From Sphyrna mokarran (taxonomy: Eukaryota), in the NCBI GenBank assembly GCA_024679065.1, contig JAGIQG010000009.1, positions 102,610,001 to 102,674,000 on the forward strand: a stretch of 64,000 nucleotides of DNA. Reading direction: 5' to 3'. Below the pieces are notes generated by a model, which was given only the letters and a program-made list of their open reading frames with translations, was not told where the DNA came from and ran no database searches. Shown in pieces: positions 902-38,126 of this stretch. Position numbers and translations under genes: made by a program. Positions within the stretch are counted from its first letter, which is position 1. Each line of letters begins with the position of its first letter.

Positions 902-968
902 ATGGAGCAGTTATTCCGTCTCCTGTTGCTGCCTGTCCTCTTCCAACTCCGGGCCGGCGGTGCAGAAG
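902..968 (+). CDS. Ig-5TM gene exon 1: signal peptide MEQLFRLLLLPVLFQLRAGGAE
   Basis: ATG in good context (GGGATGG), hydrophobic core, and a phase-1 donor (AAG|GT at 969) that joins the IgV exon in frame. Confidence 0.8.
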
Positions 969-1125
969 GTGGGGGGGGAGGGGGTAAGGGGGGGGAGGGT
1001 AGGGGGGGGGAGGGGGTGAGGGGGTGAGGAGGGGGAGGGGGAGGGGGGTAAGGAGGGGGAGGGGAGGAGCGGGAGGGGAGATGAGGAAGGAGGAGGGAGG
1101 AGGGAGGGAGGGGGTGAGGGGTGAA
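969..1125 (+). repeat. G-rich low-complexity tract with G-quadruplex potential at the start of intron 1
   Basis: Dense G3-G8 runs separated by A/T. Confidence 0.75.
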
Positions 1126-1304
1126 ACAAGGAGAGAAGCAAGTCCCCAGCAACGGGGAATGAATGGGAGCCGACTCAATGAATTGGTCAAATCCCCTCTA
1201 CCCCTGTACAGGGATATACCGGAGTCACTGCACTCTGCAAATGGCGCTTTTTTTTCATTGCTCAGACTCAGCTTCACGTTCCTTCACTGAATTATCTCTG
1301 AAAA

Positions 1305-1560
1305 GGGCGGCACGGTGGTTAACAGTACTGCCTCTCAGCACCGGGGACCTTGGGTCCCATTCCTGCCTGCGGTGAAGCCTGTCTGTGTGGAGCTTGCACA
1401 TTCTCCCCGTGTCTGCGTGGGTTTCCTCCCGCACTCCAGAGATGTGCGGGTTAGGTGGATTGGCCATGTGAAATTAGTCCCGAGGTTGGGGGATTAGCAG
1501 GGTAAATGAGCATAGGGCCTGGGTGGGATAGTGTTCGTGCAGATTCAATGGGCTGAAACC
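1305..1560 (+). mobile_element. HE1/V-SINE-type tRNA-derived SINE (representative of the CR1-tailed subfamily)
   Basis: tRNA-like head and V-domain GTCTGTGTGGAG..TGCACATTCTCCCCGTGTCTGCGTGGGTTTCCTCC. Similar copies lie at ~6913-7712(-), 8345-8640(-), 9875-10312(-), 14535-14828(-), 29865-30186(+), 35300-35605(+), 39575-39865(-), 43322-43635(-), 45525-45805(-) and 48452-48725(+). Confidence 0.85.
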
Positions 1561-1569
1561 CTGCCCAAC

Positions 1570-2130
1570 CACTTTTCCCCATTCCCTCCCACAGCCTCTT
1601 TGCCCTCTTCCTCCCCCAGCCTTTATGCCCCCTTCCGTCCCTCCAGCATATTTGCCCCCTCCCTCCAGCATATTTGTCGCCTCCAGCCTCTCTGCCCACC
1701 CCCCTCCCCCGCTGGCCTCTCTGCCCAGCCCCCTCCTCCGCCAGCCTCCCCCACCGGTCTCTTCTGCCCTCCCCTCCCCTGGCCTCTTCTGCCCTCCGGC
1801 CTGTTTGCATCATCCCCTTTGCCCCTGTCTTCCCCTCACAGCCTTTTTGTCCTCATTCATTCCCCCCACCCCCATACCCCCCCCCCCATACCCACACCTT
1901 TTCTCCCTGACCTTTTCTCACCAGCTCTCTCCCAGGTGGATTCTTTGCCTCCTTGTCCTCACCCATCTCCCCCTGTACCCACACCTTTTCTCCCTGACCT
2001 TTTCTCACCGTCTCTCTCCCGGGTGGGCTCTTTGCCTCTGCCCCCTTTTCCCCACCTTGTGTCTTTGCTCCCCCACCTCCTTTCCCTTTGAGCTCTTTCT
2101 CTCTCCCTCTCCCCTCCTGTTTCCCTTCAG
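1570..2130 (+). repeat. C/T-rich low-complexity tract with an internal ~35-bp direct repeat
   Basis: Polypyrimidine tract; TACCCACACCTTTTCTCCCTGACCTTTTCTCACC occurs at ~1889 and ~1976. Confidence 0.7.
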
Positions 2131-2522
2131 GCTCTTTAAACCCATCCTGCCTGCCACTTGCACTACACTCAGGTCAATTCATACACTGCTGCTCCCCCCA
2201 AGGGAGTGCTGCGCAGTCAGAAGCCTTGTCTTTCGGGTGAGGTTGAAGAGTGTAGGAATTGTCCCCAGTGTTGTTAGCAGATATCAATCCCTCAAATCAA
2301 CACACCAAAAAAAAGCCCAGAAGTTTCCGGCTGGTAACCCTGCTGTCGTGAACGGAGATTTGGCTGAGGGTCAAATTTTCCATCCTCACTTGCAGCGGTG
2401 ACTGGCCATGAATGGCTTGTTGTTGTCACACTGCGGAATCAAGGTGTGCACAAACTGACAGTCATATTTTCTACATTAGGGCAGTGACTGTCCTTCGTTG
2501 TGTCCTTTCATGGGGCTATTTA

Positions 2523-5500
2523 AATACACTCGGAACGAGTGCCTAGTTCGAGTCTTTACGTCGCTCGTCGACGTTTTTGTCAACCTCTAGCGAAACCCCA
2601 GTCAGGGGGGCTCACTTGATCTTGATTGAGGTACGTGTGTTGGAGTCACCTCTAAGATGTTACTAGCTAGAGAACGTGAGTTGGGTTCACAGCTAAGGTG
2701 TTATAGCTAGGTCGTGTTGTCATCCCAGGTGTGTATGGGCTTACTGGTGAGCCAATTTTGTCGGTCCTTGGTACTCGGGTCTCTGTACCCGCATGCATGG
2801 GGTGTCAATTTAGAGGGAATCAGGCCGAATTAAGGGGGTTCATTTCATTGACACTTTAGTTTCGCCAATCAGCCTGTTATAGCACGTTTTTGGCCATGTG
2901 GGAGGAAACCGGAGTGCCCGGGGAAAACCCACGCAAGCACAGGGAGAATGTGCAAACTCCCGCAGACATTGACCTTGGCCGGTAATCCGCCCTTGATCTC
3001 TGTAACTGCCCAGCCGACAGTGCTAGTCACCGGGCTGACGTGCTGCCCAAAGTCAGTCCATGTCAGCTCACACTACCGGCAGTGAAGTTCTGGATCACTC
3101 TCAGATCTCCACCCAAGAACCATCCATGCACCACCCGCCGAGTGCATGCCCCTTGTCATAGACAAGGTGGACTGTGACACCTGTAGGTGTAATAGGTGTT
3201 AGTATACATATTTACACATCACACGCTGTACAGTATATACAAACACACAGTCCGACAAACACCAAAGAGTCCTCCATATTGACATATGGGCTCTGCAGAG
3301 GGCAGTTTGCCATGATGTCTGACAAGTGGCCAGCTTGTCCTCCGGTTGTGATTGCCTCTCACCTGTCGTTGAAGATCCCCAATATCTCCAACGTGAGTGA
3401 CAAGGTGAGCCTTGAAATTTGTTGGGCGAATGAACGGAATCTCTTTATTCCCAGGAAGGCCATGAGGCTGTTATTCTTTTCCAACCATTTGCTCCTGGCG
3501 CCAACAACAAATCCAAAGTATTTGGGGTTCGGGCATCCCGTCAATTCCTCAATTTCTGGTCCCAGATGTTGGTACTTCTGGCACTTTTCCTGCCACGCCT
3601 TCTCCAGACTGTCATAGTTGTCCTCAAACCGGACTGTCACATCCACCACCGCTACCTGCTGGTCCTTTTCCCTCTTGAAGACGATGTCCGGCTTCCAGAG
3701 GCTGCCGTCCTTGGCAATGAGCCTTGGCTCCAGGTATGATGTCCAGCCGTATTTTCCGACATACTTATGCAGTTGGTCCAGGATCTTATTATGGCGTTTG
3801 ATCCGGCAGTTTTTCACGAATGGGCAAAAGCCTGAAATGTGACCGAGTGTTTCAAGACCTGTCCCACACCTTCGACAGGTCTTTGTGGCAGAGGGGTTCC
3901 CTCTCGACAGGGTCACCCTCGTCGGGTATAGGTTGCACCGGAGTAGCATGTTATTTACCAGGCGATGGGACTTCAGCTGGTATGCAGCCTTCATCCAACT
4001 GTTTGAAATTCTGTCATCGTGGTAGTAGTGAACTCCCACTCCTTGTGATGTGAGCTGTCTCCACTTGTGGAATTCCCATTCCCTCCACCCAGCATATCTA
4101 TTCAGTGGTTTGCTGGGTCCTGTCTCCTCGGCCGCCAGTGTCGGCAGTGCGGCTCTGATCATGGCTGTTTCGTCATTGCCACCGTCTTCCCTTGTAGGCA
4201 TGAAGTCTTCGATGTCCCTCAAAGCCTTGAGGGATCTCAGATCTTCGATGTTTCTGCCAACGTCCTGTTCACAGAACTGGAATGAGGCGCGAATGACTTG
4301 ATCTGTGGAGGCAGACAGTGCTTCCCATTTTCGGATCACCGCAGATGGTATCTGGATCTCGAGCTTAGGAATGCCCAGACCTCCATTTCGCGCCCGCGAA
4401 TAGAGGATTCCATCTGTAGTATGAGGTGGAAGGTGCAGGAACTGCTTGACAGCATTGCATATTAATTGGTCCAGTTTTACCAGCGTGTTCTGTGACGCTC
4501 CAGTTAGGATCAGGTGATAGTACAGCCTTGGTATGACATGGACAGTTAGCAGCTCGACGCGTTGCCTTGGGCGAAGAGCTGCTGCTTGTAGACTGGAGAT
4601 CCAAGTCTTCAGCCTGTCCTCCCATGCTCCTTCTTCCACACCAGCCCACGGGTCTATCCGGGCTCCCAGTTATTTCTCTGTCTCACCTGGTGGGATGTAT
4701 GCAATCTCTTCCTTCTGAATCCTCCAGTTTTTGCATTGATTATAAATAAAGGTCTTCCTCTTACAGGTGAAGTGGAATCCTTTGGTCTTGTTGATGTTGA
4801 CAGTAAGACCAGTCATTTCGCAAAAAGTCTGAAGAACCTTCAGGTTCCGTACCATCCCGGTGTGCGAGTCACTGAGCAGGGCAATGTCATCAGCAAACGC
4901 AAGGGCGGAGCAGTTGATTCTCACTCCATCTAGCATCATACTGACACCAGACTTAGCCGCTTCCAGACTGCACAGCAGTGGATCCAAAGCAATATTGAAT
5001 AGTACCGGTGAGAGCGGGTCTCCTTGCTTGACACCCCTCTCGATTGTTATTGGGGTGGTTTTCGACTTGTCGCCTTCCACCACCGTTGTGTTGCCAGTGT
5101 AGAGATTCTGAATGAGCTCCACAAAGGCGTCTGGTAGTTTGACTCTCTGTAATGCTTTAAAGAGTAGTTTGTGACCAACTGAGTCGAACGCTTTCGCCAA
5201 ATCAACAAAGACGACTGCGAGGTCCTTGTGGTTTTTCTTAGCTCCCTTCATTATATTTTGCAACACTGCAATGTTCTCATTGCACCCGGAGTAGCTGCCA
5301 AAAACCCTTTCTGCCTTGGGTTTATGTCGACTGTCTCACTCAGTCGTTTCGCCATGATCTTTGTAAATAGGCGCAGCAGCATTGGACCGATGGTAATTGG
5401 TCGCCAGTTGTCAATATTTTTAAGGCGTTCCCTGTCCTCGCATTTTGGGATCAGGACCGTTCGACTCTGTTTCATACAGAGAGGGATCGTCTTTGAAGCC

Positions 5501-6886
5501 AACCACAAGGAGAAGAGACGAGGTATGCGGGTTTCGTAGGCCTCGTGTATCTTCCGGATGTCCTCCAATTTCTGCCCATCCGGTCCAGGCGCGCTATCCT
5601 CCTTTATGCCCTTGATGGCCTGGGTAACCTCCTCTTCGGTGATTGGCTTCATCAACTCACCGTTATCTGTATTCCCATTGTACGCTTGGAATTTATTGAT
5701 ATTTGCCTTATTGTTCTGACTGGAGAGTTTCTCCCGAAAGCTTGCCTCCAGTTCCTCAGTCGTAAGTGGACATTTCATTTGTGTAGGCGCGCCCATGATC
5801 TGCCGGGCTAGTTGACGCCTATTGTTCTTGTAGAGCATCTGTGTTGCTCTAAAGACGGATTTCTGTTTTGCCCATCGTTTCTTTGCTCCACTATTAACCT
5901 CGTGCCGAGGCCCTCGGTTAACTTTCTTTCGTGCCTTCTCTTTCGGACAAGCCTTCTTTTGCCCTTTTCCATCACCTCTCATCAGAAGGTCAGTGATGCT
6001 CTCGATTAAACCCACTGCCAGGGTTAGATCTTCAGGGTCGTTCCTCGCAGATAATAGCCTCTCGATTTGGCTGAGATTCTCCTCCACATCCCTATGCTTA
6101 GGGACATGTGCCATAGGCTGACTGATGGAACTTACCTGCGGTACCAGATCTCTGACATCTCCCTCTTCAGGCTCCTGTTCTCTCTCAGAGTCTGGGTTCT
6201 CAGCCACAACTGGGAGTGCGTTGTTTGCTGATTTGCGCGCATTTGCCAGCAGCCTGCGCTTTTCAGAGATTTGTTTGGCCGTTTTAGTTGTTAAAATACT
6301 CCCAATCTCTTTATTGATGTACCGGGCACCAACAAATCTCTGTTCAAGCTCCACGAGGAGCGATTCCTCCTCCTCGGACCATACGCTCTTACTTCTACCT
6401 CGTTTGGCTGGGGGCTTAGGTAGTGCCTTTTCCGCACGTTTTTCATTGCGGAGGACCGGGTGACGGTGTCGCTCATGCTGGCTGAGTCCACTTTCTGTAG
6501 TGAAGGCCAACTCACATGCACTGCACTTGTATTGACCCACTGCCAGAGGCTTCACGCCCTGACATTTTGGGTAGTGGCAGGCAATTGAGTGGTACTCACC
6601 AGTCCTCCCGCACCGAGCACACTTAGTCACGATCTTCTTGGTCCTGTGCACTTTCTTGAGATGGTCTCTGAAAGCCCCAACCGAGGAGTGTATGGACTTG
6701 CAAGGCTTGCAATACAACGCATCAGTAGGGTAATGGATCACCACCTCCTTAACCTCTGAGCGGTCCTCTGTAGATGTTATTGTAATTGTCTCGATGAAGG
6801 TGCCCTCCTCCTGAGCACCTCCATCGCTTGCGGTATTTTGGCTGTTATCATTATTTCCCAAGCCCTTATTCAGGGCTAAATATGCC
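2523..6886 (-). mobile_element. R2-clade non-LTR retrotransposon, 5'-truncated, inserted outside rDNA
   Basis: Single ORF (3359-6886) broken by one frameshift (~5280) and one in-frame stop (4670, KYLG to K*LG). It encodes three N-terminal zinc fingers, a Myb domain (WSEEEESLL..KTAKQISEKRR), RT (GVKQGDPLSP, LAFADD), a CCHC knuckle and a restriction-like endonuclease (RHN, KPDIV, VDVTVRFE, KCQKY). It has an ~835-nt 3' UTR and a candidate 5-bp TSD ATTTA at 2518-2522 and 6887-6891. Confidence 0.9.
2850..3215 (-). ncRNA. Structured 3' UTR cassette in the R2 element: TACTAAC branch point, CTACAG|G acceptor, multi-stem RNA and degenerate tRNA-head/V-SINE domain
   Basis: Colinear similarity and compensatory base changes relative to 26410-26770 and 55550-55880. 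Confidence 0.6.
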
Positions 6887-7351
6887 ATTTAGAGCTTGGG
6901 GTGTACTGAGTTCATAGAATCCCTACAGTGAAAGAGGAGGCCGTTTGGCCCATCAACCCCGCACCAACAACAATCCCATCCAGGCCTTACCCTGTAACCC
7001 CATGTATTTACCCTAGCTAGTTCTGCTGACACTAAGGGGCAATTTAGTTTGGCCAATCACCGTAACTGCCTCATCTTGGGGCACTAAGGAGCAACTTAGC
7101 ACGGGCAATCCACCTAACCCGCACATCTTTGGAGTGATGTGGAGGTGCCAGCATTGGACTGGCACAGTAAAAATTCACACAATACCTGTCCAACAGGTTT
7201 ATTTGATATCACAGGCTTTCGGAGGCTACTCCATTAGAGAGTGGAGAGTTGGGTTCACAAGCATGGCATATATACACAGAGACTCAATTGCAAGATAATG
7301 ATTAGAATGTGAGTCTTTTCAGATAATCAAGTCTTTGGAGTGTGGGAGGAG

Positions 7352-7573: not shown

Positions 7574-7951
7574 GTGAGGAAATAGAGAACATGAAGAAAA
7601 TCCATACAAACAAGGGGAGAACATGTAGACTCAAGATGGACAGTCATCAGAGACTGGGATTGAACCTAGGTCTCTGACGCTGTGAGACAGCAGTGCTCAC
7701 CATTGTGCCACCCAAGCGGGGGGTCTGTCTTTCCAACTTTCTTCCATACTCGGCAGATCAGGCAGCATCTGTGGAGAGAAACAGAGATTCAGGTTGGGAT
7801 GGCCTTTCATCAGAATGGAAGGAAGGTAGAAATATCAGAGTTTATAAGCAAGAGGAGGTGGGGAGCTGGGGGGGAGAATAAAAGTACATTCAATATCAGT
7901 GTTTCACTGTCACACTTCGAGAGATTACATTTGCTGTTTTATGTTATTCAG

Positions 7952-8257
7952 CCGGAGGAAGAGAAGTATTTGGTGTCCATGGTTGCTCGGTTTTACTGGA
8001 TCCAAAATATGAAGCCAATCTCAGTGAGAGTGAAGTTATGTGGACATTCATCGGCAGCAATGGGAACCTGGTTACCATTTTGGATTACGTACCAAATCAC
8101 CCAATGGAGGAACCAAATAAGCACTTCAAATCTCGCTTACAATTCAGTTCATCCAATGGAGCGCTGACGTTAAATGATTTAAACTCCGGTGACCAAGGGG
8201 TTTATCGCATGACTGTCGATGACAAATTACAATGGAATGCATCTCTGAAACTCATTG
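7952..8257 (+). CDS. Ig-5TM gene exon 2: V-set Ig domain of CD2/SLAM/CEACAM type (no canonical B-F disulfide)
   Basis: TTCAG| acceptor and G|GTGAGT donor, phase 1-1; AGGREVFGVHGCSVLLDP..VMWTF..FKSRLQFSSSNGALTLNDLNSGDQGVYRMTV. Confidence 0.9.
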
Positions 8258-8691
8258 GTGAGTTGTTTGGAAATTCTCAGTTTCAAAGTGTTGCCACTCA
8301 GACAACAAAAAAGTTAATTTCCATTCACTCCACATTCAGGCCTATCATAGAATCCCTACAGTGCAGAAGGAGGCTATTTGGTCCATCAAGTCTGCACAAT
8401 CCCATTTACGTGCCCTATTCACGTAACCTCACACATTTACCCTGCTCGTCTCCCTGATACAGATCAGCCTAACCCACACGTCTTTTGGGCTGTGGGAGAA
8501 AACCTGATCACCCGGAGGAAACCCACGCAGACACAGAGAGAATGTGCAGACTCCACGCAGATAGTGACCCAAGGCTGAAATTGAACTTGGGACCCTGGCG
8601 CTGTAGGTAGCAGTGCTAATGGCTGTGCCACCATACCACCCACAATTCCCTGGGCTCATTTGGGATTTGAACCCAGGACCTCTTGGCATTC

Positions 8692-9725
8692 TGGTGGTTG
8701 AGGGAAATTTTTCATCCTGGAGTTCTGTTACAAGTGGTGTACCTCAGGGATCTGTTTTGGGGCCCCTGCTGTTTGTAATTTTTATAAATGATCTGGATGA
8801 GGGTATTGAAGGATGGATGAGTAAATTTGCAGATGACACCAAAGTCGGAGGAGTGGTAGATAGTGAAGAGGGGTGTTATAGTTTGCAGAGAGACTTGGAC
8901 AAGTTGCAGAGCTGGGCCGAGAGGTGGCAAATGGAGTTTAATGAGGAAAAGTGTGAGGTAATTCACTTTGGCAGGAATAACAAATGTGTAGAGTATAGGG
9001 CTAATGGTAGGACTCTTAATAGTGTTGAAGAACAGAGGGATCTTGGTGTATGTGTGCATGGATCCCTGAAAGTTGGCAATCAAGTCGAAAAGGTTGTTAA
9101 GAAGGCATACGGAGTCTTAGCTTTTAATGGTAGGGGGATTGAATTTTGCAGCCGCAACATCATGTTGCAACTGTACAAAACTCTAGTGCGGCCGCTCTTG
9201 GAGTATGGTGTGCAGTTCTGGTCCCCGCATTATAAGAAAGGTGTGGAGGCATTGGAGAGGGTACAGAGGAGGTTTACCAGGATGTTGCCTGGTATGGAGG
9301 GCAGGTCTTATGAAGAGAGGCTGAGGGATTTGAGGTTGTTTTCGTTAGAAAGGAGGCGGCTAAGAGGGGACCTTATTGAAACATATAAGATGATTAGAGG
9401 TTTAGATAGGGTGGACAGTGATAGCCTTTTTCCTAGGATGGAGAAAGCTAGCACGAGGGGACATAGCTTTAAATTAAGGGGTGGTAGTTATAGGACGGAT
9501 GTCAGAGGTAGGTTCTTTACCCAGAGGGTGATAAGGGTATGGAATGCCCTGCCTGCTGCAGTGGTAGATGTGCCAAGTTTGGTGGCGTTTAAGAGGTTAG
9601 TAGATAAGTTTATGGATGAAAAGGGAATGGTTTAGGTTAGAGAGTCATTGCTTTTTTTTTAATTGGTCGGCACAACATCGAAGGCCGAAGGGCCTGTTCT
9701 GCGCTGTAATGTTCTATGTTCATGT
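8692..9725 (+). mobile_element. CR1 LINE, 5'-truncated 3' kilobase
   Basis: [24 protein letters not shown] and a CR1 3' tail; very similar to 62320-63345. Confidence 0.92.
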
Positions 9726-12943: not shown

Positions 12944-13213
12944 AAGTACTTCCTGAACCTTCAATTGTTGGCAATTCCACCTGCATGGATACCACTATTG
13001 AATTGACCTGTCGAGTATCTGCAGGGACAGCGAGCTCCACTCTCTGGTGGAAAGATGATGAAATGATAACAGATGGCCAACATTATCAACTAATGAAAAA
13101 CAACAGCACATTGATTATTCCCAGAGCCATCAAGTCAAATTGCGGGAATTATACTTGCATCGTGGAGAACCCTGTTAGCAAGAGGACCAAGTCATACGCT
13201 CTTACTATTCACG
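12944..13213 (+). CDS. Ig-5TM gene exon 3: C2-set Ig domain
   Basis: TTTTCAG| acceptor and G|GTGAGT donor, phase 1-1; EVLPEPSIVGNSTCMDTTIELTC..WWKD..NNSTLII..CGNYTCIVENPVS. Confidence 0.92.
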
Positions 13214-15607: not shown

Positions 15608-15721
15608 GTCTTACAAATATACACTGTGGCACCGTGGCATTTTCCATCGCTGCTCTTGTGACTGCTGTTGTCACATTGTTAACTGCTGCTATAAGCGTTT
15701 TGAGTAAGCATTGCAAAGAAA
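15608..15721 (+). CDS. Ig-5TM gene exon 4: stalk and TM1 (GLTNIHCGTVAFSIAALVTAVVTLLTAAISVLSKHCKE)
   Basis: ATTTCAG| acceptor; two alternative phase-1 donors (after 15703 and after 15721); long hydrophobic stretch. Confidence 0.8.
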
Positions 15722-19037: not shown

Positions 19038-21809
19038 CTCAGTAAAGTTTTGCAACACCAATTTTAAATCCAACCAATTTATTTGATAGTAAATCCGCGA
19101 GCTTTCGACACTATGTTGTGCCTTCGTCAGGCAAATGCAGTGTTCTGATCTGCAGAGGCACTCAAATCCACACAGACAGTTACAGATTGCTGATTAGAAT
19201 GCGAATCCTTACATCTAACCTGCTATTCAAGTGTTAAAGTGGCTAACAATGTGTGTGAAGGGAATCCTGAGCATTGGTTAGAGAATTGTGTATTTTCTCC
19301 AGACAGCACAGTAAGTGAGGTTTTTTGCTAACCCAGGCAAGTTACGGGGGTTACAGATAGTGTGTCATGAAGCCAAGATCCCTGTTAAGACCATCCTCGT
19401 GTGCGGAGCTTGGCTATCAGTCTCTGCTCAGCGACTCTGCGCTGTCGTGTATCACGAAAGCCCCCTTGAAGAACATTTACCCGCAGGTCGGAGGCCGAAT
19501 GCCCATGACTGCTGAAGTGTTCGCCCACAGGAAGGGAACGGTTTTGCCTGGTGATTGTTGAGCGATGCTCATTCATCCGCTGTCATAGTGTCTGCATGGT
19601 CTCCCCAATGTACCATGCTTCGGGACATCATTTCTTGCAACGTATTAGGTAGACAATGTTGGCCGAGTTGCAAGAGTATGTACCGTGTACCTGGTGATTG
19701 GTATCCTCACGTTTGATGATGTCGTCCATGTCTATGATCTGACATGTCTTGCAGAGGTTGCTGTGGCAGGGTTGTGTGGTATTGTGGTCACTGTTCTCCT
19801 GAAGGTTGGGTAGTTTGCTGCGAACAATGATCTGTTTAAGGTTGTGCGGTTGTCTGAAAGCAAGAAGTGGGGGGGGGGATGTCCCTAGCGAGATGTTCAT
19901 CGTCATCGATGACATGTTGAAGACTCCGGAGAAGATGTCGTAGCTTCTCCGCTCCAGGGAAGTACTGGACAACAAAGGGTACTCTGTCTACCTTGTCCCG
20001 TGTTCGTCTTCTGAGGAGGTCAGTGCGGTTTTTCGCTGTGGCACGTTGGAACTGTTGATTAATGAGTCGAGCGCCATATCCTGTTCTCACGAGGGCATCC
20101 TTCAGCGTCTGGAGGTGTCTGTCACGATGCTCCTCATCTGACAAATTCTGTGTATACGGAGGGCTTGTCCATAGGGAATGGCTTCTTTAACGTGTCCAGG
20201 GTGGAAGCTGGAGAAGTGGAGCATTGTGAGGTTGTCTGTCGGTTTGCGGTACAGTGAGGTGCTGAGGTGACCGTCCTTGATGGAGATGCGTGTGTCCAAG
20301 AATGCAACTGATTCTGGAGAATAGTCCATGGTGAGTCTGATGGTGGGATGGAACTTGTTGATATCATCATACAGTTGTTTCAATGATTGTTCACCATGAG
20401 TCCAAAGGAAAAAGATGTCATCAATCATTGAAACAACTGTATGATGATATCAACAAGTTCCATCCCACCATCAGACTCACCATGGACTATTCTCCAGAAT
20501 CAGTTGCATTCTTGGACACACGCATCTCCATCAAGGACGGTCACCTCAGCACCTCACTGTACCGCAAACCGACAGACAACCTCACAATGCTCCACTTCTC
20601 CAGCTTCCACCCTGGACACGTTAAAGAAGCCATTCCCTATGGACAAGCCCTCCGTATACACAGAATTTGTCAGATGAGGAGCATCGTGACAGACACCTCC
20701 AGACGCTGAAGGATGCCCTCGTGAGAACAGGATATGGCGCTCGACTCATTAATCAACAGTTCCAACGTGCCACAGCGAAAAACCGCACTGACCTCCTCAG
20801 AAGACGAACACGGGACAAGGTAGACAGAGTACCCTTTGTTGTCCAGTACTTCCCTGGAGCGGAGAAGCTACGACATCTTCTCCGGAGTCTTCAACATGTC
20901 ATCGATGACGATGAACATCTCGCTAGGGCCATCCCCACCCCCCCACTTCTTGCTTTCAGACAACCGCACAACCTTAAACAGATCATTGTTCGCAGCAAAC
21001 TACCCAACCTTCAGGAGAACGGTGACCACAATACCACACAACCCTGCCACAGCAACCTCTACAAGACATGCCAGATCATAGACATGGACGACATCATCAA
21101 ATGTGAGGATACCATTCACCAGGTACACGGTACATACTCTTGCAACTCGGCCAACGTTGTCTACCTAATACGTTGCAAGAAAGGATGTCCCGAAGCATGG
21201 TACATTGGGGAGACCATGCAGACACTACGACAGCGGATGAATGAGCATCGCTCAACAATCACCAGGCAAAACAGTTCCCTTCCTGTGGGCGAACACTTCA
21301 GCAGTCATGGGCATTCGGCCTCCGACCTGCGGGTAAATGTTCTTCAAGGGGGCCTTCGTGACACACGACAGCGCAGAGTTGCTGAGCAGAGACTGATAGC
21401 CAAGTTCCGCACACATGAGGACGGTCTTAACAGGGATCTTGGCTTCATGACACACTATCTGTAACCCCCGTAACTTGCCTGGGTTAGCAAAAACCTCACT
21501 TACTGTGCTGTCTGGAGAAAATACACAATTCTCTAACCAATGCTCAGGATTCCCTTCACACACATTGTTAGCCACTTTAACACTTGAATAGCAGGTTAGA
21601 TGTAAGGATTCGCATTCTAATCAGCAATCTGTAACTGTCTGTGTGGATATGAGTGCCTCTGCAGATCAGAACACTGCATTTGCCTGACGAAGGCACAACA
21701 TAGTGTCGAAAGCTCGCGGATTTACTATCAAATAAATTGGTTGGATTTAAAATTGGTGTTGCAAAACTTTACTGAGTTTACTCCAGTCCAACGCCGGCAT
21801 CTCTACATC
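19038..21809. mobile_element. Penelope-like element (GIY-YIG) present as a ~1.35-kb-arm inverted duplication
   Basis: RT C-terminus (IDDIFF) and GIY-YIG (NVVYLIRC..WYIGET..RMNEH) on both strands; 13-bp TSD ATGCTGGTTCAAA at 19025-19037 and 21810-21822. Confidence 0.92.
21678..21721 (+). ncRNA. Minimal type-I hammerhead ribozyme in the PLE pLTR (mirror copy at 19093-19136, - strand)
   Basis: ATTTGC-CTGACGA-AGGCACAACATAGTGTC-GAAA-GCTC-GCGGAT: CUGANGA and GAAA cores, stems I and II pair, and a minimal palindromic stem III as known for PLE hammerheads. Confidence 0.8.
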
Positions 21810-23275: not shown

Positions 23276-23380
23276 GGTTCCAGTCCGTTCAAGAGAAGCT
23301 GCAGCATTTCCTGGAATTTGCCCCAGTGCTTTCATTTATCTTTCTCCTTGTTGCGTGTGGGTGTTGGGTACAGACTGAAG
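23276..23380 (+). CDS. Ig-5TM gene exon 5: TM2 (RFQSVQEKLQHFLEFAPVLSFIFLLVACGCWVQTE)
   Basis: TTTTCCCAG| acceptor and AAG|GTATGT donor, phase 1-1, hydrophobic segment. Confidence 0.8.
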
Positions 23381-25467: not shown

Positions 25468-25554
25468 TGTGCCACGAAATTTTCAATGTCGTAACGTCGG
25501 TGGAAGATATCATTGCAATGTCTATTCTGTTTGCTGAAGTACTGGGACAAACTG
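25468..25554 (+). CDS. Candidate extra or cryptic exon, paralogous to the TM4 exon (xCHEIFNVVTSVEDIIAMSILFAEVLGQT)
   Basis: TTCACAG| acceptor and G|GTGAGT donor, open phase 1-1 frame; aligns to 31349-31444. Confidence 0.45.
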
Positions 25555-28766: not shown

Positions 28767-28886
28767 GACCTTCTGGAAGTGCTGTGATTCTGTTAGTGCT
28801 TTTATTCTTGCATCTAATAATAACCATATTTTCTGCCTTTAATATGGTGACCTGTGAGACATTGCATGAGATCTTGTCAACCAAAC
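28767..28886 (+). CDS. Ig-5TM gene exon 6: TM3 (GPSGSAVILLVLLFLHLIITIFSAFNMVTCETLHEILSTK)
   Basis: Polypyrimidine tract with TTAG| acceptor and C|GTAAGT donor, phase 1-1; too short for the ORF track. Confidence 0.8.
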
Positions 28887-31348: not shown

Positions 31349-31444
31349 GCTGCCGTGTCGTTTTTGGTTTAGTAGCTCCAGTGGGTGGGATCATCGGGAT
31401 ATGTGTGTCGAGTATCCTGATTACAGAAGTGATGAAACAAGCTG
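31349..31444 (+). CDS. Ig-5TM gene exon 7: TM4 (RCRVVFGLVAPVGGIIGICVSSILITEVMKQA)
   Basis: TTCCCAG| acceptor and G|GTGAGT donor, phase 1-1. Confidence 0.8.
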
Positions 31445-33506
31445 GTGAGTGTTCAGTGATGCTTTCAGAATTGAACTGACGAATTTAACATCCGGTCTGT
31501 CAGCGATTGGGAGAGCCTGGTCAATTTTGCTACAGTTTCATGTGAATCCTTCAAGCTTTTAAGTTCACTATGCTACCAAGTTGTTGCTCAACCGATTCAA
31601 ATCTAACGCAATTACCTTTGCTCCTTGTGGCCTTTCCTGCCTGGTTCAGAAAAACATTGAAGATAGAAGCAAGAGTAGGCCATTCAGCCCTTCAAGCCTG
31701 CTCCACCATTCATTATGGTTATGGCTGATGATCAGATTCCCTGATCACACCTTTCCCATATCCTTGATTGCTTTAGCCCCAAGAGCTGTATCTAATTTCT
31801 TCTTGTAATCACACAATATTTTGGCCTCAACTACTTTCTGTATTTCTTCAAATCCCCCCTAAATCTCCCACTTCTCACTTTTAACTTGTGTCCCCCTCGT
31901 AACTGACCTTTCAACTAAGGGGAACAGCTGCTCCCTATCCACCCAGTCCATGCCCCTCATAGTCTTGAACACCTCAATCAGGTTGTTCCTCAATCTTCTA
32001 GGCTCCAGAGAAAACAACCCAAGCCTTGATCCCTTTAATGCTAAGAGCTATATCCAATTCCTTCTTGAAATCACACAACATTTTGGCTTCAACTACTTTG
32101 TGTGGTAGTGAATTCCACACATTCACCATTCTCTGCATGAAGAAATTTTTCCTCACCTCAGACTTAAAAGGTTTACTCTTTATCCTCAAACTGTGATCCC
32201 CTAATTTTGGACTCCCTCATTTCCCTCAAGAGCTATAACTGATTTCAGCTTGAGATCGCACAATGTTTTGGCCCCACCTTCAAATGTTTACTCAATTTTC
32301 CATTGAGCTGCAATAGTTTATATCTCAGCCTTACCCTGTGGCAATGTACTTCCAGTTGTTTCATGATCATTGATAAAAACATTTCTGCTCATCTTTTATT
32401 TTCATCCTTGAGTGACTTTTTTGTGAGTTGGTAAACCATGTTTTACTAAAAGATCTGGTTTCCTTATTCATTCTATCAAACTCTTTAAAACCTCTGGAAT
32501 CTTTCGAATTTACGAGTTGCTGTGGCAGGCAAATACCTGATAAACAGGATGGCTGGGATTGGCACCTTTAATGCTTTTGCTACCCTGTACCTTGCGAACT
32601 TTCATGTTGCCAGATAATCATAACCACAATTTAAAGCCGGATCATTTCCTGATTTATGCTCTTGAGTCAGGAGTGTCAGGAGTGCTAATAGGGAATATCC
32701 TGGTATTTGGTAATAATGAAAGATATGTAAGAAATATCAAATCGACTGTAATAAGTCTTCGAGGTGGAAGTTCTTTCACCAAAAGTCCTTTATTTCCAAG
32801 GACTATATAGTATTATTTGATAACGCTGTAACACAGTAACACTATATAGATTGCTCTCAGTATGCAGTCTATCTCTGGAGGAAGCAGCACTCCTGTCTAA
32901 GTACAGAGCAAGGGGCTCCCTGACTAGACCAACAATTTGGCCCTTAATCGGGGGGTTCATATTCAAGCAGACTGACCTAAATTGCCTGATTATAATGGTC
33001 AGATCGAACATAACTCATGAGACAAGCTGAAAATTGTGAGCCAAGGACTTTTCCTTGGCAATGATCTAAAACGGGCAGCACAGTGGCACGGTGGTTTAGC
33101 ACTGCTACCTCTCTGCGCCAGGGACCCAGCTTCAATTCCCAGCTGGGGTCTGTGTGGAGTTAGCATGTTCTCCCTCTCCCTGCATCGGTTTTCTTTGGTT
33201 GCTCCGGTTTCCTCTCACTGTCCGAAAGACATGCTAGTTGGGTGGATTGGCCATGCTAAACTCTCCCTGAGTGCACCAGAACAAGTGCCAGAGTATGCCA
33301 ACTGGGGGATTTTCACAGTAATTTCTTTGCAGTGTTAATATAAGCCTAGTTGTGACACTAATAAATGCTAAGATGGGTACATTTACTTTTTCAATTGGCT
33401 TGTGTATTGCATCTGTTTATTATATTTGTTGTGAATGGATTGCACTGATTTCCCACCAATCTGTTCATTAGAACTACATTTCAGCTATTTATCCCTCTGT
33501 TACCAG

Positions 33507-33608
33507 GTGAAGAATGTGAACCAGCAGCCCACTTACAATCAACAATAATCTGTGCCGTGATAGTGACATTCGTTATTCTTGGTGTAACCTTTCAGCTCTA
33601 CAAATTAT
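33507..33608 (+). CDS. Ig-5TM gene exon 8: loop and TM5 (GEECEPAAHLQSTIICAVIVTFVILGVTFQLYKL)
   Basis: TACCAG| acceptor and T|GTAAGC donor, phase 1-1. Confidence 0.8.
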
Positions 33609-36425
33609 GTAAGCAATAATGACAGACATCGTTTAAAATCTACTATAAAGGACAATGTGCTTTGAACAGAAACCTTGACTGCGTTTTGCACATGACATGG
33701 TGCAGTAGTTTGCACAGCTGCCTCTTAGCACCAGGGACCCTGGTTCAATTCCCTCTGTGTGGAGTCTGCTTGTTCTCCCCATGTATGTGTGGGCTTCCTC
33801 CAGGTGATCTGGCCTCCTCCCACAGTCCGATGTGTTAGTTAAGTGCATTAGTCATGCTAAATTCTCCTCCAGTGTACCAGAAAGGTATTGGAGAGTGACG
33901 ACTAGAGGATTTTCTTCATTGCATTTCAAGAATGCATTTTGCATTTTTTGGTACTATTTTGTTAACCACTCAGTGCCTCTGTCTCCGAGTAAGCATCCTC
34001 TACATCTACATGATTAGGAGTTCATCTTTCATGGTGGCAGAGTAGTTAGCACTACTGCCTCACAGCACCAGGTTCGATTTCCGACTTGGGTCACTGTCCA
34101 TGTGAAGTCTGCATGTTCTCCCCATGTCTGCATGGGTTTCTTCTGGGTACTCCCTCCAGTCTCATCACACAGTCTGAAAGGTGTGCTGGTTAGGTACGTT
34201 ACCATGCTCAATTCTCCTTCTGTGTACCTGATCAGGCAACAGAGTGTAGCAACTAGGGTTTTTCACAGTAGCTTCATTGCAGCATTAATGTAAACCTACT
34301 TGTGGCGCTAATAAATAAACTTTCAAAACTTAAATGATAAAGATAACATCTTGCCTTAAATTAACAACAGTAATAGGTTAACAAATTCATCCCGTTTTGG
34401 GATGAACTCATTTGAATGACTGTAGATTGAGAGAGAGGAACATTCAACAGGACCTGGTGTCCTCGTACACCAGACAAAAGTAAGTGGGAGGATATATGTT
34501 AATGTATCAAATGTTGAGACTGTCATTAAAGCAAACAGAGAATGTTGGAAAAGGTCAACCAGTCTGGCAAAAAATTCTGAGGAAGAAGGTGGAGGCTTTG
34601 ATGGAATCATTTGGACTCAAAATGTTTCTCTCCCCACAGATGGTGCCAGGCCTATTGTGTTTTTCCAGGATTTTCCATTTTACAGATTTCTAGCATCTGA
34701 AGTATTTTGGTTTTATTCATACTGTCAATTTCCATTTGTAAATGACCAAGTCTTAAGGAGTCCTGATGCATTGCAGGGTTAGGGCCACTGCACACAGAGA
34801 AACCATCCCCTGTCCTTCTGCACTGAGCACAATGTTGAGATGATTTGATTAGTTGAGCTCTAGCCTGTTCTTGCAACATTCAGAACATAGTTTCCAACAT
34901 TAGATGTGACTCCATGATTGGATAGCATTTACTGAACAATACTAAACATGCCAAGATATTTTCGTGTGTGAAAGCTATTTCAGAACCCTGCTCAAGTTTT
35001 CTCTGCTCTGTTGCCCGAGAAAACATTTCAGCTGGAATTAAGCCTGACAGTAAAGTTTGGTGTGTGACAAAATGGTTTCAATCTGATCCAAACTTGGGGA
35101 TCCCACGCCTGGGATTCGTACATGTCAAAGGGTGTATGGGAGCACAGAGAGAGACTGGAATTGCTAGAGTTATTTCTACTGGAACAATGAAGGCTAAGAG
35201 GTTTTTCAAATTGGTTTTGGTAGTGAATGGGCAACATTAGGAAGTTTGTGATAACTCATCTCTTTAAAATCATTGCAAGGGTGAGATGAAGGTGAGATGT
35301 GGCATGGTGGCACAATGGTTAGCACTGCTGCCTCATAGCTACAGGGACCAGTGTTTGATCCCCGGCTTGGGGCATGTCTGTATGGAGTTTGCACATTCTC
35401 CCCCTATCTCTGTGGGCTTCCTCTGAGTGCTCCAGTTTCATCCCATGCTCCAAAGGTTAGGTACATTAGTTTCCCTTAGTGACCCAGGATGCATAGATTA
35501 AAGGGATTAGCAGGAGTTACGGGGGATTGGACGTAGGTAGGATTGTTGTCAGTGCATTCTTGAAGGCCGAATGGCCTCCTCCTGCACTTGAAGGTTTCTG
35601 TGAATTTTATATGAACTATTGAAGCATCAAAGAGTGGTTGAGGTGGGTTGCTGTGGATCTGGAGTTACATGTGGGGTAGGCAAGTGTCTAATAAAAGACA
35701 TTAGTGAATTAAATGGGCTCTGAAACAATGGTTTTATGGCCATCATTAGATTTTTTATTCCAGGTTTTTACTATATTCAACTTTCACCATCAGTCTTGAT
35801 CCTACTAATTCGGTGACAATACCACTGGGCCACTGTGTCTTTTATAAATTGTCGCTCCCTTTGAAACTTGGTATTCTGGCATTTGTCCCGCTGTGTGCAA
35901 GACAAAAAAACTAGGCAGAGTGCTCTCCTTTTTCTAAACAACAGAAAAGGATATTTGTGAGTCAGGCTGTTTTTTTTAATAACAATCAATGATAGTTTTT
36001 ATGGTCAGCATCGCTAGGATTTATTTTTAACTCCAGATTTATCAATGAGTTGAATTTAAGTTCCATCACATGCTGTGATGGGATTTGAACCCATGTCCCA
36101 GCTAGGGCATCTGGATTATCAGTCACATGACACTACCGTTGTGCCACCATCAGCCATATTCTCAATTGATTCGAGGCTGGATGACCCAATAACTGCACCG
36201 ACATCTGTAAGTGTGGGCAGGAGCATTTGGTAGGTAATGCCCCCAAAGGATTTTATATGTCTCCCCTCATCCTTCACATCATGCAATCGGACAGCATAAA
36301 ATCCAATCTGTGGTGCCTGAGGCAAAAACCTGTGCACTGTTTCAGATCAGCCAGTTATTGAAAACTTTTGTCCAATTCATTTTTGCATTGATATAATTCC
36401 TTGCATCTTTGCATCACAAACACAG

Positions 36426-36506
36426 GTTGGAAAAGACAGATAAGTGGAACTTCATCTGAAAATACCTACACAAAAGTAAAAAGCTCTGGTAAGAGTCAAC
36501 ATAGTG
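36426..36506 (+). CDS. Ig-5TM gene exon 9: cytoplasmic tail (CWKRQISGTSSENTYTKVKSSGKSQHS)
   Basis: CACAG| acceptor; phase-1 donors after 36488 (GTAAGA) or 36506 (GTAAGT); basic juxtamembrane KR and a YxxV motif. Confidence 0.6.
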
Positions 36507-38046
36507 GTAAGTATTGGAATCGAATACAAATATTTAGTAAGAAATACAGCTGCTATCCTGACCTTTTCTATAATGGGATGTCCCTGCCATTATTGTGGTG
36601 GGAATGGAAGATTTTATTTCATTTTCCAGTTTTGAGGTTTTTAAGTTTATGGGACATGGATATTGCTGGCTAGCCAGCATTTACCCTCCCTAGTTGCCCG
36701 AGCTCAATTGAGAGTCAATCACATTGCTGTGGTCAGGTCAGCCCAGGTCAGCTCGGCAGATTTCCTTTTCTAAAGGACACTAGTGAACCAGCTGGGTTTT
36801 TCTGACAATCGACAATGGTTTTATGGCCATCAGTAGGTTCTTAATTCTGGATTTTTTTTTTATTGAATTCAAATTCTACCATCTACTGTGGCAGGTTACA
36901 AACATAGGTCTCCAGAACATTAGCTGAGTTTCTGGATTAATAATCTGGCATTAATACCACTGAGCCATCTCCTCCTCATAAGTGGAAAAGACTCCAGTAT
37001 TTTAGGACAGCGTGGTGGCACAGTGATTAGCACTGCTGCCTCGCAGTGCCAGGGACCCACGTTCAATTCCGGTCTTGAGTGACAGTCGGTGAGCAGTTTG
37101 CACGTTTGCCCTGTTTCTGTGTGGGTTTCTTCTGAGTGCCCTGGTTTTTTTCCCACAGTCTGAAAGATGTACAGGTTAGATGGATTGGCCATACTCAATT
37201 GTCCCTTAGTGACAAAATTTGTGTAAGTTAGGGAGATTAGTGGGGTAAGTACAGAGGGATGAATTTTTTTTTCGCCCATCATGGGAATCATAGCAGGCGA
37301 AGGGGTGGTCCATGGCGGTCCACTAACTTTCGGTGGGATTTTCCGATTTTGGGGTGAGGTGAGCATGGCTGAAAAATCCCATCCGTGGGGTTAAGGGGAT
37401 AGGGCCTGGGTGGGATGCTCTGTCAGAATGTGGGAGCATCTCACCAGGTCCACTGCCTGCTCTATTCCCATAGTACCACATACTTACCCTGCTAATCCCT
37501 CCCAAGCTATACATCTTGGGATACTAAGGGAGCAATTCAGCGTGGCCAATCCACCTAACCTGCACATCTTTCAACTATGGGAGGAAACTGGAGCATGAGG
37601 TGGGGGGGTAACCCCCACAGATATGGGGATAACGTGCAGACTCCGCACAGTCATCGAAGGTTGGAATTGAACCCAGGTCTCTGGTGCTATACGACAGCAG
37701 TGCTAATCTCTGTTTCTGTCTTTGAAAAGAAGTCTTGACTAATTAAACTGGTGGTTGAGGCAGCTTCTCTCACAACATTTAAGAAGGATCTGGAAGAGAA
37801 CTTAAATCGCACGAGATTAGGACAGGTTGGTGTTTGATGATCAACGTAGACTTGTTGGGACAAATAACCCAATTCTGTGCTGTATGACTCAATGGTTCAT
37901 GTATTAAAGGAAAAAGCTTGATTTAATGCTTTGCTCAAAAAGAAAGGTCAAATCAAATACAAATGAAGAAGTGTCGACTTTACATTTTTGCATGTTTGAA
38001 TAAAATATGCCTGCTTATCTTTAAATTCACTTTTGTCTTACTTTAG

Positions 38047-38126
38047 GAGCTGAAGGAAACATAATTAAATCCAGCATAGCCACTATTGCAAAAGTGATTC
38101 CAACAAGAAGCACTGCCAACAAGTGA
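38047..38126 (+). CDS. Possible terminal coding exon (GAEGNIIKSSIATIAKVIPTRSTANK*)
   Basis: Strong polypyrimidine tract and TTTAG| acceptor; open in phase 1 to TGA. Confidence 0.4.

What the first reader, a model, noticed from the sequence alone, without database searches (positions are those of the whole stretch)
902..38126. Two-Ig-domain, five-transmembrane receptor: a CD2/SLAM/CEACAM-type ectodomain on a CD47-like membrane domain
Seen: nine or ten exons, all phase 1, join into one stop-free frame: leader, IgV lacking the B-F disulfide, IgC2, five separate hydrophobic exons and a short tail. Established: CD2/SLAM/CEACAM proteins are single-pass or GPI-linked, Skint1 is IgV-IgC with three TMs, and CD47 is one IgV plus five TMs with a long-range disulfide between an extra Ig Cys and a Cys in the TM4-TM5 loop. 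Here the membrane-proximal Ig has an extra Cys before strand B (CMDTTIELTC, compare CD47 CNDTVVIPC) and the TM4-TM5 loop has CEPAAH (compare CD47 CIPMH); the CD47 motifs are quoted from memory. Inference: a possibly uncharacterised cartilaginous-fish receptor family linking CD47-type 5-TM proteins with CD2-family ectodomains. Automated annotation would probably name it only from its Ig domains.
Basis: partly seen in the sequence, partly recalled or inferred. Interest (0 to 1): 0.85.

Follow-up and report, generated by a model that had tools for sequence, protein, structure and literature searches.

The report
Shark two-Ig, five-pass membrane receptor gene
This is an intact shark gene for a cell-surface protein with two antibody-like domains on a five-helix membrane base, one of a large undescribed shark-and-ray family that is built like human CD47 but shows no detectable kinship with it.

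Summary
On the + strand, 11 exons (902-38126) all have AG/GT sites, all are phase 1, and they sum to 475 codons plus a stop. In order they are: leader, a disulfide-less V domain, a C2/I-set domain, TM1, TM2, a cassette I call X, TM3, TM4, TM5 and two tail exons.

Exon C1 (36426-36506) is needed, because joining TM5 straight to the last exon makes TGA.

The chain is colinear with RefSeq models from other sharks (Mustelus asterias, 62-90% identity per exon). The family was seen in 16 shark and ray species. None is named CD47; they are "uncharacterized" or named after their Ig domains.

The V domain is closest to CD58, CD48 and 2B4. AlphaFold2 gives five long helices.

The TM4-TM5 loop Cys is conserved.

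Kinship with CD47 was tested by Pfam, a profile search against PDB sequences, Foldseek and VIA-align. None found it.

First readers noted two sister genes in this genome (unchecked).

The parts
902..968 (+). Exon 1: start codon and signal peptide (22 codons plus 1 base)
   Evidence: ATG at 902, hydrophobic core, donor GT at 969. 88% identical to the Mustelus P0004 N-terminus.
7952..8257 (+). Exon 2: V-set Ig domain with no B-F disulfide (CD2/SLAM/CEACAM type)
12944..13213 (+). Exon 3: membrane-proximal C2/I-set Ig domain. It has the canonical B-F Cys pair plus two extra Cys, one before strand B and one in the E-F loop.
   Evidence: Pfam I-set 2.5e-13. It aligns from its first residues to the CEA A-type domains, E 3.2e-5 per domain. 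90% identical to Mustelus.
15608..15721 (+). Exon 4: TM1. The long donor is at 15721; an alternative in-phase donor lies at 15703.
   Evidence: Kyte-Doolittle 19-residue maximum (KD19) 2.48 with 0 charges. Splice sites. The extension past 15703 matches the Mustelus model.
23276..23380 (+). Exon 5: TM2
   Evidence: KD19 2.19. 76% identical to Mustelus, E 8.5e-13. Splice sites.
25468..25554 (+). Exon 6 (X): an 87-nt cassette. It is acidic and weakly hydrophobic, starts with a conserved Cys, and is a diverged copy of the TM4 exon. It probably forms an extracellular helix in loop 1.
   Evidence: Splice sites. 77% identical to Mustelus. Present in P0161, P0169, P0012 and P0021. 39% identical end to end with the TM4 exon, E 2e-5. 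KD19 1.76 with 3 charges, net charge -4.
28767..28886 (+). Exon 7: TM3
   Evidence: KD19 2.88. 88% identical to Mustelus. Splice sites.
31349..31444 (+). Exon 8: TM4 (Gly-rich)
   Evidence: KD19 2.22. It aligns to P0004, P0161 and P0169. Splice sites.
33507..33608 (+). Exon 9: the acidic TM4-TM5 loop with the conserved Cys, followed by TM5
   Evidence: KD19 2.44. 74% identical to Mustelus. The loop Cys is present in 31 of 36 gene-level relatives.
36426..36506 (+). Exon 10 (C1): basic cytoplasmic segment with a Y-T-K-V motif. An alternative in-phase donor lies at 36488.
   Evidence: Splice sites. It aligns to the tails of P0004 and P0161. Net charge +4.
38047..38126 (+). Exon 11: the last 25 codons and the stop codon
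   Evidence: Acceptor. 73% identical to the Mustelus C-terminus.
44272..44340 (+). Relic partial copy of the TM5 exon and its downstream intron, 6 kb beyond the stop. It is probably not part of the transcript.
   Evidence: tblastn 71% over 24 aa, E 2.7e-5. DNA similarity 33533-33914 versus 44272-44695 is 68.5%. The loop-Cys part and a matching acceptor are missing.

Best explanation
This is an intact 11-exon gene for a glycoprotein that begins like a type I receptor and then crosses the membrane five times. Its parts, in order:
- a signal peptide;
- a distal V domain without the core disulfide, of the CD2/SLAM/CEACAM type that usually binds a partner on another cell;
- a CEACAM-like C2 domain;
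- five TM helices, each on its own phase-1 exon;
- an extra acidic helix (exon X, an old copy of the TM4 exon) in the first outer loop;
- a cytoplasmic tail of about 55 residues.

It belongs to a large family that was found only in sharks and rays among the proteins whose names I saw.

Shown: the exon chain, the domain types, five predicted helices, and the family with its range.

Inferred: the C2 domain is stapled to the TM4-TM5 loop by a disulfide between the E-F loop Cys and the loop Cys, as CD47 staples its V domain to the same loop. This would hold the ectodomain at a fixed angle on a rigid five-helix base. In this gene's orthogroup a second staple may join the pre-B Cys to the Cys at the head of exon X. 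Signalling would run through neighbours in the membrane and the short tail.

The membrane module is not detectably related to CD47. The likeness is best read as convergence or very deep divergence.
For: Exon chain:
- All 11 exons have AG/GT sites, are phase 1 and sum to 1428 nt.
- They are colinear with Mustelus P0004/P0151 at 62-90% identity per exon.
- They are also colinear with Scyliorhinus P0161, Carcharodon P0169 and Heterodontus P0012.

Domains:
- Pfam gives V-set 3.8e-7 and I-set 2.5e-13.
- The V exon is closest in PDB sequence to CD48/CD2, CD48 and CEACAM. The C2 exon matches CEA A-type domains.

Five helices:
- AlphaFold2 on P0160: pLDDT 71.2, helices 126-157, 163-190, 194-219, 227-263 and 270-305.
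- AlphaFold2 on the TM part of P0011: pLDDT 76.7, pTM 0.62, five long helices.
- Window TM exons have KD19 2.19-2.88.
- K+R residues lie in loop TM1-TM2, loop TM3-TM4 and the tail. Acidic residues lie in the other loops (read). This fits N-terminus outside, C-terminus inside.

Exon X has KD19 1.2-1.8 with 1-3 charges in the window gene and five relatives, against 0-1 charges in the TM exons.

Family:
- 293 representatives at E<=1e-3.
- Every relative with 4 or more hydrophobic segments whose name I saw is from one of 16 elasmobranch species.

Staple:
- Of 36 gene-level rows, 29 have both Cys, 5 have neither, 2 have the loop Cys only and 0 have the E-F Cys only.
- All 3 inferred losses of the loop Cys fall on lineages that also lost the E-F Cys.
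- One of the two loop-only rows (P0005) carries the pre-B Cys instead.
- The pre-B Cys is present in 4 of 4 database genes that have both exon X and a C2 domain, and in the window. It is present in 2 of 33 rows without X.

CD47's own staple, C15-C245 in the TM4-TM5 loop, is described in PMC8410850 (passages and section 10 read) and in PMC7206415 (passage).
Against:
- The disulfide is inferred from covariation only. With 3 co-losses the tree-based sign test cannot reach significance (median p 0.5, range 0.25-0.5).
- P0166 lost the E-F Cys and kept the loop Cys. P0021 and P0083 keep the loop Cys in models that have no C2 domain.
- No Cys-Cys distance could be measured, because the structure tool returns no coordinates.
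- Exon X reaches KD19 1.76-1.78 in the window gene and Mustelus, so a sixth span is not excluded.
- The TM models are of middling confidence.
- Function (cell-cell binding, signalling) is inferred from resemblance only.
Confidence: 0.72

Rival explanations
1. The five-helix module is a true but very distant homologue of the CD47 membrane domain. The family would then be a sister or ancestral form of CD47, and the C2 domain would stand where CD47's single V domain stands.
For: - Same order of parts: Ig domain, five helices, short tail.
- A conserved Cys in the same loop (TM4-TM5) that tracks an Ig-domain Cys, as in CD47 (PMC8410850).
- Some family models have one V domain plus five helices (P0021, P0053, P0083, P0076, P0160).
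- One helix per exon, and tail exons whose skipping would give a very short tail. CD47 tails of 4 to 34 residues arise by splicing (PMC7206415 passage).
- Weak sub-threshold Pfam V-set_CD47 hits on the C2 domain: window exon E 0.0018, and 3 of 10 relatives.
Against: - Pfam CD47 TM model PF04549 hit 0 of 5 exons, 0 of 10 proteins and 0 of 11 TM parts at E<=10.
- The TM profile A2 found 0 hits at E<=10 in PDB sequences. It found 0 at E<=1 among 8000 database candidates of about 98-313 aa.
- The W-F linker motif that CD47 shares with its viral relatives is absent from the window linker.
- The V-set_CD47 hits are far weaker than the generic I-set hits on the same stretch.
Confidence: 0.18
2. The protein has six spans. 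Exon X crosses the membrane, so TM3-TM5 are flipped, the Cys-bearing loop is cytoplasmic and the C-terminus is outside.
For: - X reaches KD19 1.76 in the window and 1.78 in Mustelus.
- My crude hydropathy count gave 6 segments for P0004.
- X derives from a TM exon.
- X is conserved in several shark orders.
Against: - X has 2-3 charged residues in its most hydrophobic 19-mer in 5 of 6 sequences. Its net charge is -4 in the window, and its KD19 is 1.22-1.48 in four relatives.
- Basic residues follow TM5 and sit in loops TM1-TM2 and TM3-TM4, which fits the five-span topology.
- Most family members lack X and have five helices.
- A cytoplasmic loop Cys would not explain its co-loss with an ectodomain Cys.
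Confidence: 0.07
3. The chain is a gene-model artefact. The Ig exons plus TM1 make an ordinary single-pass receptor, and TM2-TM5 belong to a separate small membrane-protein gene in the same orientation.
For:
- RefSeq models can copy one another's structure.
- P0175 is a single-pass relative.
Against: - All junctions keep phase 1, and there is no start codon or leader for a second gene.
- The same chain is modelled in 16 species, with TM exons kept open and conserved.
- TM1 ends in a basic stretch that runs on without a stop into TM2 in the models.
- The ectodomain Cys and the TM4-TM5 loop Cys are lost together, which is expected only if they sit in one protein.
Confidence: 0.03

Closest known systems
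CD47 (integrin-associated protein) and poxviral CD47-like proteins
   Same: - Ig ectodomain followed by five TM helices and a short cytoplasmic tail.
- A conserved Cys in the TM4-TM5 outer loop that appears to pair with a Cys at the membrane-facing end of the adjacent Ig domain. CD47's pair is C15-C245 (PMC8410850).
- Tail carried on small exons.
   Different: - Two Ig domains instead of one, and the distal V domain lacks the core disulfide.
- The Ig-side Cys is in the E-F loop of a C2 domain.
- No match to Pfam PF04549, no profile hit and no fold-search hit to CD47.
- No W-F linker motif.
- A multigene family with fast-evolving TM parts, not a single conserved gene.
CD2/SLAM family (CD2, CD48, CD58, 2B4/CD244, NTB-A, SLAM)
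   Same: - Distal V domain without the B-F disulfide followed by a C2 domain.
- Best sequence match (CD48/CD2 chimera) and best structure matches (CD58, 2B4, CD48).
- RefSeq calls some members CD48 antigen-like.
   Different: - Five-pass instead of single-pass or GPI-anchored.
- The tail motif N-T-Y-T-K-V lacks the Thr at -2 of the TxYxxV/I switch motif (motif recalled).
CEACAM family
   Same: - N-terminal V domain without a disulfide.
- The C2 exon aligns from its first residues to the CEA A-type C2 domains.
- One relative is named CEACAM1-like.
   Different: - CEACAMs are single-pass or GPI-linked (recalled).
- No five-helix module.
- Similarity is at the domain level only.
Skint1 (IgV-IgC with three TM helices)
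   Same: A two-Ig ectodomain on a multi-pass membrane part.
   Different: Three helices rather than five. No comparison was run here, because I had no Skint sequence from a tool.

Membership tests
CD47 | Five TM helices directly after the Ig ectodomain, with the C-terminus inside the cell | tested here: met
   Five long helices in both AlphaFold2 models. Five window exons have KD19 2.19-2.88, and basic residues lie on the predicted inner side. This is a prediction only.
CD47 | Sequence match to the CD47 transmembrane family model (Pfam PF04549) | tested here: not met
   0 of 5 window TM exons, 0 of 10 full-length relatives and 0 of 11 TM parts at E<=10. HMMER filters may drop very weak hits.
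CD47 | A single V domain with the canonical disulfide joined to helix I | tested here: not met
   The window gene has a V domain without B/F Cys plus a C2 domain. A few relatives' models have one V domain, also without the disulfide.
CD47 | Inter-domain disulfide between the Ig domain and the TM4-TM5 loop | tested here: inconclusive
   The loop Cys is present. Across 36 rows the counts are 29 both, 5 neither, 2 loop only and 0 E-F only. There are 3 joint losses, but the sign test is not significant. No distances or chemistry are available.
CD47 | Linker with buried W-F (the SWF loop), conserved also in viral CD47-like proteins (PMC8410850) | tested here: not met
   The window linker between the C2 domain and TM1 has no W-F pair (translation). 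No alignment to CD47 was possible, because I had no CD47 sequence from a tool.
CD47 | Fold of the TM bundle like that of full-length CD47 | tested here: inconclusive
   No CD47 chain is in the top 50 of Foldseek PDB, VIA-align wide or VIA-align second look for the TM-only model, nor for the V+5TM model. I could not confirm that the full-length chain was among those aligned. Model pLDDT is 76.7.
CD2/SLAM family | Distal V domain lacking the B-F disulfide, followed by a C2 domain | tested here: met
   The best structure matches are CD58, 2B4 and CD48.
CD2/SLAM family | Single TM helix or GPI anchor | tested here: not met
   Five predicted helices.
CD2/SLAM family | TxYxxV/I switch motifs in the tail (SLAM receptors; motif recalled) | tested here: not met
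   The window tail has one Tyr, in N-T-Y-T-K-V, with Asn at -2.
MARVEL four-helix domain | Match to Pfam PF01284 over TM2-TM5 | tested here: not met
   1 of 10 full-length proteins (E 0.011) and 1 of 11 TM parts (E 0.003), both below the cut-off. No family recurs in more than one member.

The most novel reading that the evidence does not exclude
The five-helix base and its Ig-to-loop disulfide are homologous to CD47's. CD47 would then descend from, or share an ancestor with, a CD2/SLAM-like two-Ig receptor family that survives as a multigene family only in sharks and rays. This would give the 'unique' CD47 fold its first relatives and tie two major leukocyte recognition systems together.
Probability: 0.17. 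Interest if true: 0.85.

Novelty: new variant of a known kind. Interest (0 to 1): 0.62.

Why it matters
The paper on the full-length CD47 structure calls CD47 the only five-TM receptor of the immune system. It reports no sequence or structural relatives of the CD47 membrane domain (abstract, section 10).

Here is a whole family of Ig receptors on a five-helix base, found in 16 shark and ray species. It carries a CD2/SLAM-type recognition domain and signs of the same kind of Ig-to-loop disulfide.

If the two are related, CD47's origin becomes traceable. If they are not, the same unusual build and the same disulfide staple arose twice. That would argue that a rigid multi-helix pedestal is a general way to present an Ig domain at a fixed angle.

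The family is also a test bed for exon shuffling. Every exon is phase 1, and the relatives show duplicated V, C2 and TM exons.

Whether the family acts in immunity is not known, because no expression data could be obtained.

Tried and rejected
- Per-exon Pfam scans for a colinear series of weak CD47-TM hits found none.
- A region-restricted search with the P0011 TM part found only itself and one Scyliorhinus gene in two isoforms. The TM part diverges too fast for word-based search.
- ESM Atlas on the TM part gave no usable hit.
- A profile of 11 TM parts found nothing in PDB sequences and nothing in the large protein collection. The latter covered only lengths of about 98-313 aa and 8000 candidates.
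- The weak Pfam V-set_CD47 hits on the C2 domain were rejected as evidence. Generic Ig models score far higher on the same stretch.
- Seven literature searches for a prior description found none: and by six RefSeq LOC numbers. One search, a broader search on CD47 evolution in teleosts, also found none; from it I read only passages of PMC13262535, which did not bear on this. Supplements were closed, so gene lists that might mention these loci, and the species lists of PMC8410850, were not seen.
- The rest of the window (38-64 kb) holds no further family exon except the TM5 relic.

Full report
THE EXON CHAIN. I read every candidate exon with its flanks. I then checked them by script without joining them. 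Eleven exons lie on the + strand:
- leader, 902-968
- V domain, 7952-8257
- C2 domain, 12944-13213
- TM1, 15608-15721
- TM2, 23276-23380
- X, 25468-25554
- TM3, 28767-28886
- TM4, 31349-31444
- TM5, 33507-33608
- C1, 36426-36506
- last exon, 38047-38126

All ten acceptors are AG after a pyrimidine tract, and all ten donors are GT. No exon has an internal stop and all are phase 1. The lengths sum to 1428 nt, which is 475 codons plus TGA. None of the ten codons that span an intron is a stop.

First, exon X was missed. Third, TM1 and C1 each have a second in-phase donor (15703 and 36488). Full-length questions were put to database proteins instead.

ORTHOLOGUES AND FAMILY. A full HMMER scan with the V exon found 293 cluster representatives at E<=1e-3, and 12 at E<=1e-30.

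The best single-domain hit is P0004, Mustelus asterias XP_078073557.1, "uncharacterized protein LOC144496861". Laid on the window by tblastn, it matches every exon in order:

| Exon | Identity to Mustelus |
|---|---|
| Leader | 88% |
| V domain | 83% |
| C2 domain | 90% |
| TM2 | 76% |
| X | 77% |
| TM3 | 88% |
| TM5 | 74% |
| C1 | 62% |
| Last exon | 73% |

TM1 and TM4 are covered inside longer alignments. P0161 (Scyliorhinus canicula), P0169 (Carcharodon) and P0012 (Heterodontus, a model that ends early) give the same order, X included. On a tree, P0004, P0161 and P0169 form a clade with 100% SH-aLRT support.

All proteins with four or more hydrophobic segments whose source names I saw come from 16 elasmobranch species. 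The sharks are Mustelus, two Scyliorhinus species, Hemiscyllium, Chiloscyllium, Heterodontus, Carcharodon, Cetorhinus, Rhincodon and Heptranchias. The rays are Pristis, Amblyraja, Hypanus, Hemitrygon and two Mobula species.

The four non-elasmobranch hits I looked up were two from a loach, one from carp and one from a frog. These are long multi-Ig proteins with 0-2 hydrophobic segments. No holocephalan was seen.

Names are "uncharacterized" or taken from Ig similarity, and never CD47. Close LOC numbers on one chromosome in Hypanus and Pristis suggest tandem clusters. First readers of this scan noted sister genes 124 kb upstream of this window and 17 kb beyond its end. I did not check those notes.

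DOMAINS. The V exon scores Pfam V-set 3.8e-7. It has one Cys, and it is at neither the B nor the F strand position. Its best PDB sequence matches are a CD48/CD2 chimera (E 0.007), then JAML, CD48, CEA, CEACAM1 and CD58 at E 0.08-0.8.

The C2 exon scores I-set 2.5e-13. It aligns from its first residues to the A-type C2 domains of CEA.

MEMBRANE PART. Five window exons have a Kyte-Doolittle 19-residue maximum (KD19) of 2.19-2.88 with 0-1 charged residues.

AlphaFold2 with a 35-row family alignment gave five long helices after the V domain of P0160 (mean pLDDT 71.2, pTM 0.52). With the TM part of P0011 as target it again gave five long helices (pLDDT 76.7, pTM 0.62).

Basic residues cluster after TM1, after TM3 and after TM5. 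The TM2-TM3 and TM4-TM5 loops are acidic. This fits N-terminus outside and C-terminus inside.

Exon X is different. Its KD19 is 1.76 in the window and 1.22-1.78 in five relatives. It has 2-3 charges in that stretch in 5 of 6 sequences, and a net charge of -4 in the window. It is 39% identical end to end with the TM4 exon (E 2e-5 for the pair). It was also the best non-self hit of the TM4 peptide in the whole window. I read it as an old duplicate of the TM4 exon that now forms an extracellular helix. A sixth span is not excluded.

All exons being phase 1 explains the variants seen in relatives. Mustelus isoform X1 has two V domains. Scyliorhinus and Heterodontus have two C2 domains. Some models lack the C2 domain. 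One single-pass form joins the C2 domain to a TM5-like exon.

CYSTEINES. I tabulated the family at the alignment columns of the pre-B Cys, the E-F loop Cys (five residues before the F-strand Cys), the Cys at the head of X, and the TM4-TM5 loop Cys.

For the count I collapsed isoforms to 36 gene-level rows. I dropped P0064 and P0184 because their models end before the loop, and P0120 because it is off-family. I left out the models that have no C2 domain: P0013, P0021, P0053, P0076, P0083, P0160 and their isoforms.

| State | Rows (of 36) |
|---|---|
| Both E-F and loop Cys | 29 |
| Neither | 5 |
| Loop Cys only | 2 |
| E-F Cys only | 0 |

The five "neither" rows are three events: the P0159/P0164 pair, the P0023/P0171 pair and P0040. 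Each sits next to rows that have both Cys. All three inferred losses of the loop Cys coincide with losses of the E-F Cys. The plain Fisher test gives 5.6e-5, but it ignores relatedness. The tree-based sign test cannot reach significance with so few events (median p 0.5, range 0.25-0.5).

Results against the pairing:
- P0166 lost the E-F Cys and kept the loop Cys.
- P0021 and P0083 keep the loop Cys in models without a C2 domain.

P0005 has the loop Cys with a pre-B Cys in place of the E-F Cys.

In most members the E-F Cys is the only unpaired Cys of the ectodomain. Its loop lies at the membrane end of the domain (general Ig-fold knowledge). A staple to the TM4-TM5 loop is therefore the simplest reading.

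It occurs in only 2 of 33 rows without X. X begins with a conserved Cys. A second staple, pre-B Cys to X, is possible but untested.

IS IT CD47-LIKE BY DESCENT? The full-length CD47 structure paper (PMC8410850) gives these features:
- the C15-C245 disulfide to the loop between helices IV and V;
- a W-F linker loop;
- a Gly at the top of helix III that is kept even in poxviral relatives;
- no sequence or structural relative of the membrane domain.

I saw the abstract, passages and section 10 of that paper.

My tests were as follows:
- Pfam PF04549 hit 0 of 5 TM exons, 0 of 10 full-length relatives and 0 of 11 TM parts at E<=10.
- The TM profile hit nothing in PDB sequences at E<=10.
- It hit nothing at E<=1 among 8000 length-limited candidates of the large collection.
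- Foldseek on the TM-only model gave no match at E<=0.001 in the PDB (best 0.41) or in the viral library (best 0.33). No CD47 or CD47-like row is named among the 50 shown in each, though some viral rows carry no name.
- The V+5TM model matched only single V domains, with about 90-105 residues aligned.

The window linker has no W-F pair.

There are limits to these tests. I had no CD47 sequence from any tool, so no profile-profile comparison was possible. I could not confirm that the full-length CD47 chain was among the chains aligned. The models are of middling confidence. The verdict is that the build is the same, probably the staple too, and descent is not shown.

LITERATURE. Seven searches found no description of such a family: and with six RefSeq LOC numbers. 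One search, a broader search on CD47 evolution in teleosts, found none either; passages of one of its papers, PMC13262535, were read and did not bear on this. PMC7206415 (passages only) confirms the CD47 long-range disulfide and spliced tails of 4 to 34 residues. Supplements were closed.

There is therefore no transcript evidence for this genome and no DNA of the orthologous loci. One run (X1, kind guessed as RNA) holds all 28 sampled words of the V exon, but no holder is on record as RNA. Function is inferred from resemblance: trans binding by the CD2-type V domain, a pedestal fixed by disulfide, and signalling through membrane neighbours and the short basic tail with one Y-x-x-V motif.

Noticed in passing
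window 44272-44695 (+): A partial copy of the TM5 exon plus its downstream intron lies 6 kb past the gene's stop. It is 71% identical over 24 aa and 68.5% over about 430 nt. It lacks the loop-Cys part and has a 3-nt deletion. It is probably a relic of a segmental duplication.
   Followed up: partly
window 19628-21464, both strands (TM1-TM2 intron): Two copies of one element lie head to head. Identical 108-aa ORFs sit at 20102-20428 (-) and 20383-20709 (+). The longer + ORF carries a GIY-YIG nuclease domain (Pfam 8.3e-5), as in Penelope-like retroelements (that link is recalled).
   Followed up: partly
window 3359-6888 (-) and 8613-9635 (+): Reverse-transcriptase ORFs of non-LTR retroelements lie in introns 1 and 2 (RVT_1 at 6.8e-30 and 1.3e-14). 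The first also has zinc-finger ORFs. Other first-reader notes (s1-887775, s1-887730) cover this element.
   Followed up: partly
window 33608/38047 junction; donors at 15703 and 36488: Skipping exon C1 would place TGA across the TM5-to-last-exon junction and give a protein that ends three residues after TM5. TM1 and C1 each have a second GT donor in the same phase. Whether any of these is used is unknown.
   Followed up: no
window 38027-38266 (-): A 79-aa ORF antisense to the last exon has a hydrophobic stretch. It has no Pfam match at E<=0.01 and is probably chance.
   Followed up: partly
window 970-2400: Just after the leader exon, intron 1 is G-rich low-complexity sequence (GGGAGG-type runs). 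It gives long Pro- or Gly-rich ORFs on both strands.
   Followed up: no
family alignments A1, A2 (relatives, not the window): Across sharks and rays the V domain is far better conserved than the membrane part. All nearly invariant columns of A1 lie in the V domain, and only one Trp at the end of TM2 is nearly invariant in A2. This is the reverse of what the CD47 paper describes for mammalian CD47.
   Followed up: partly
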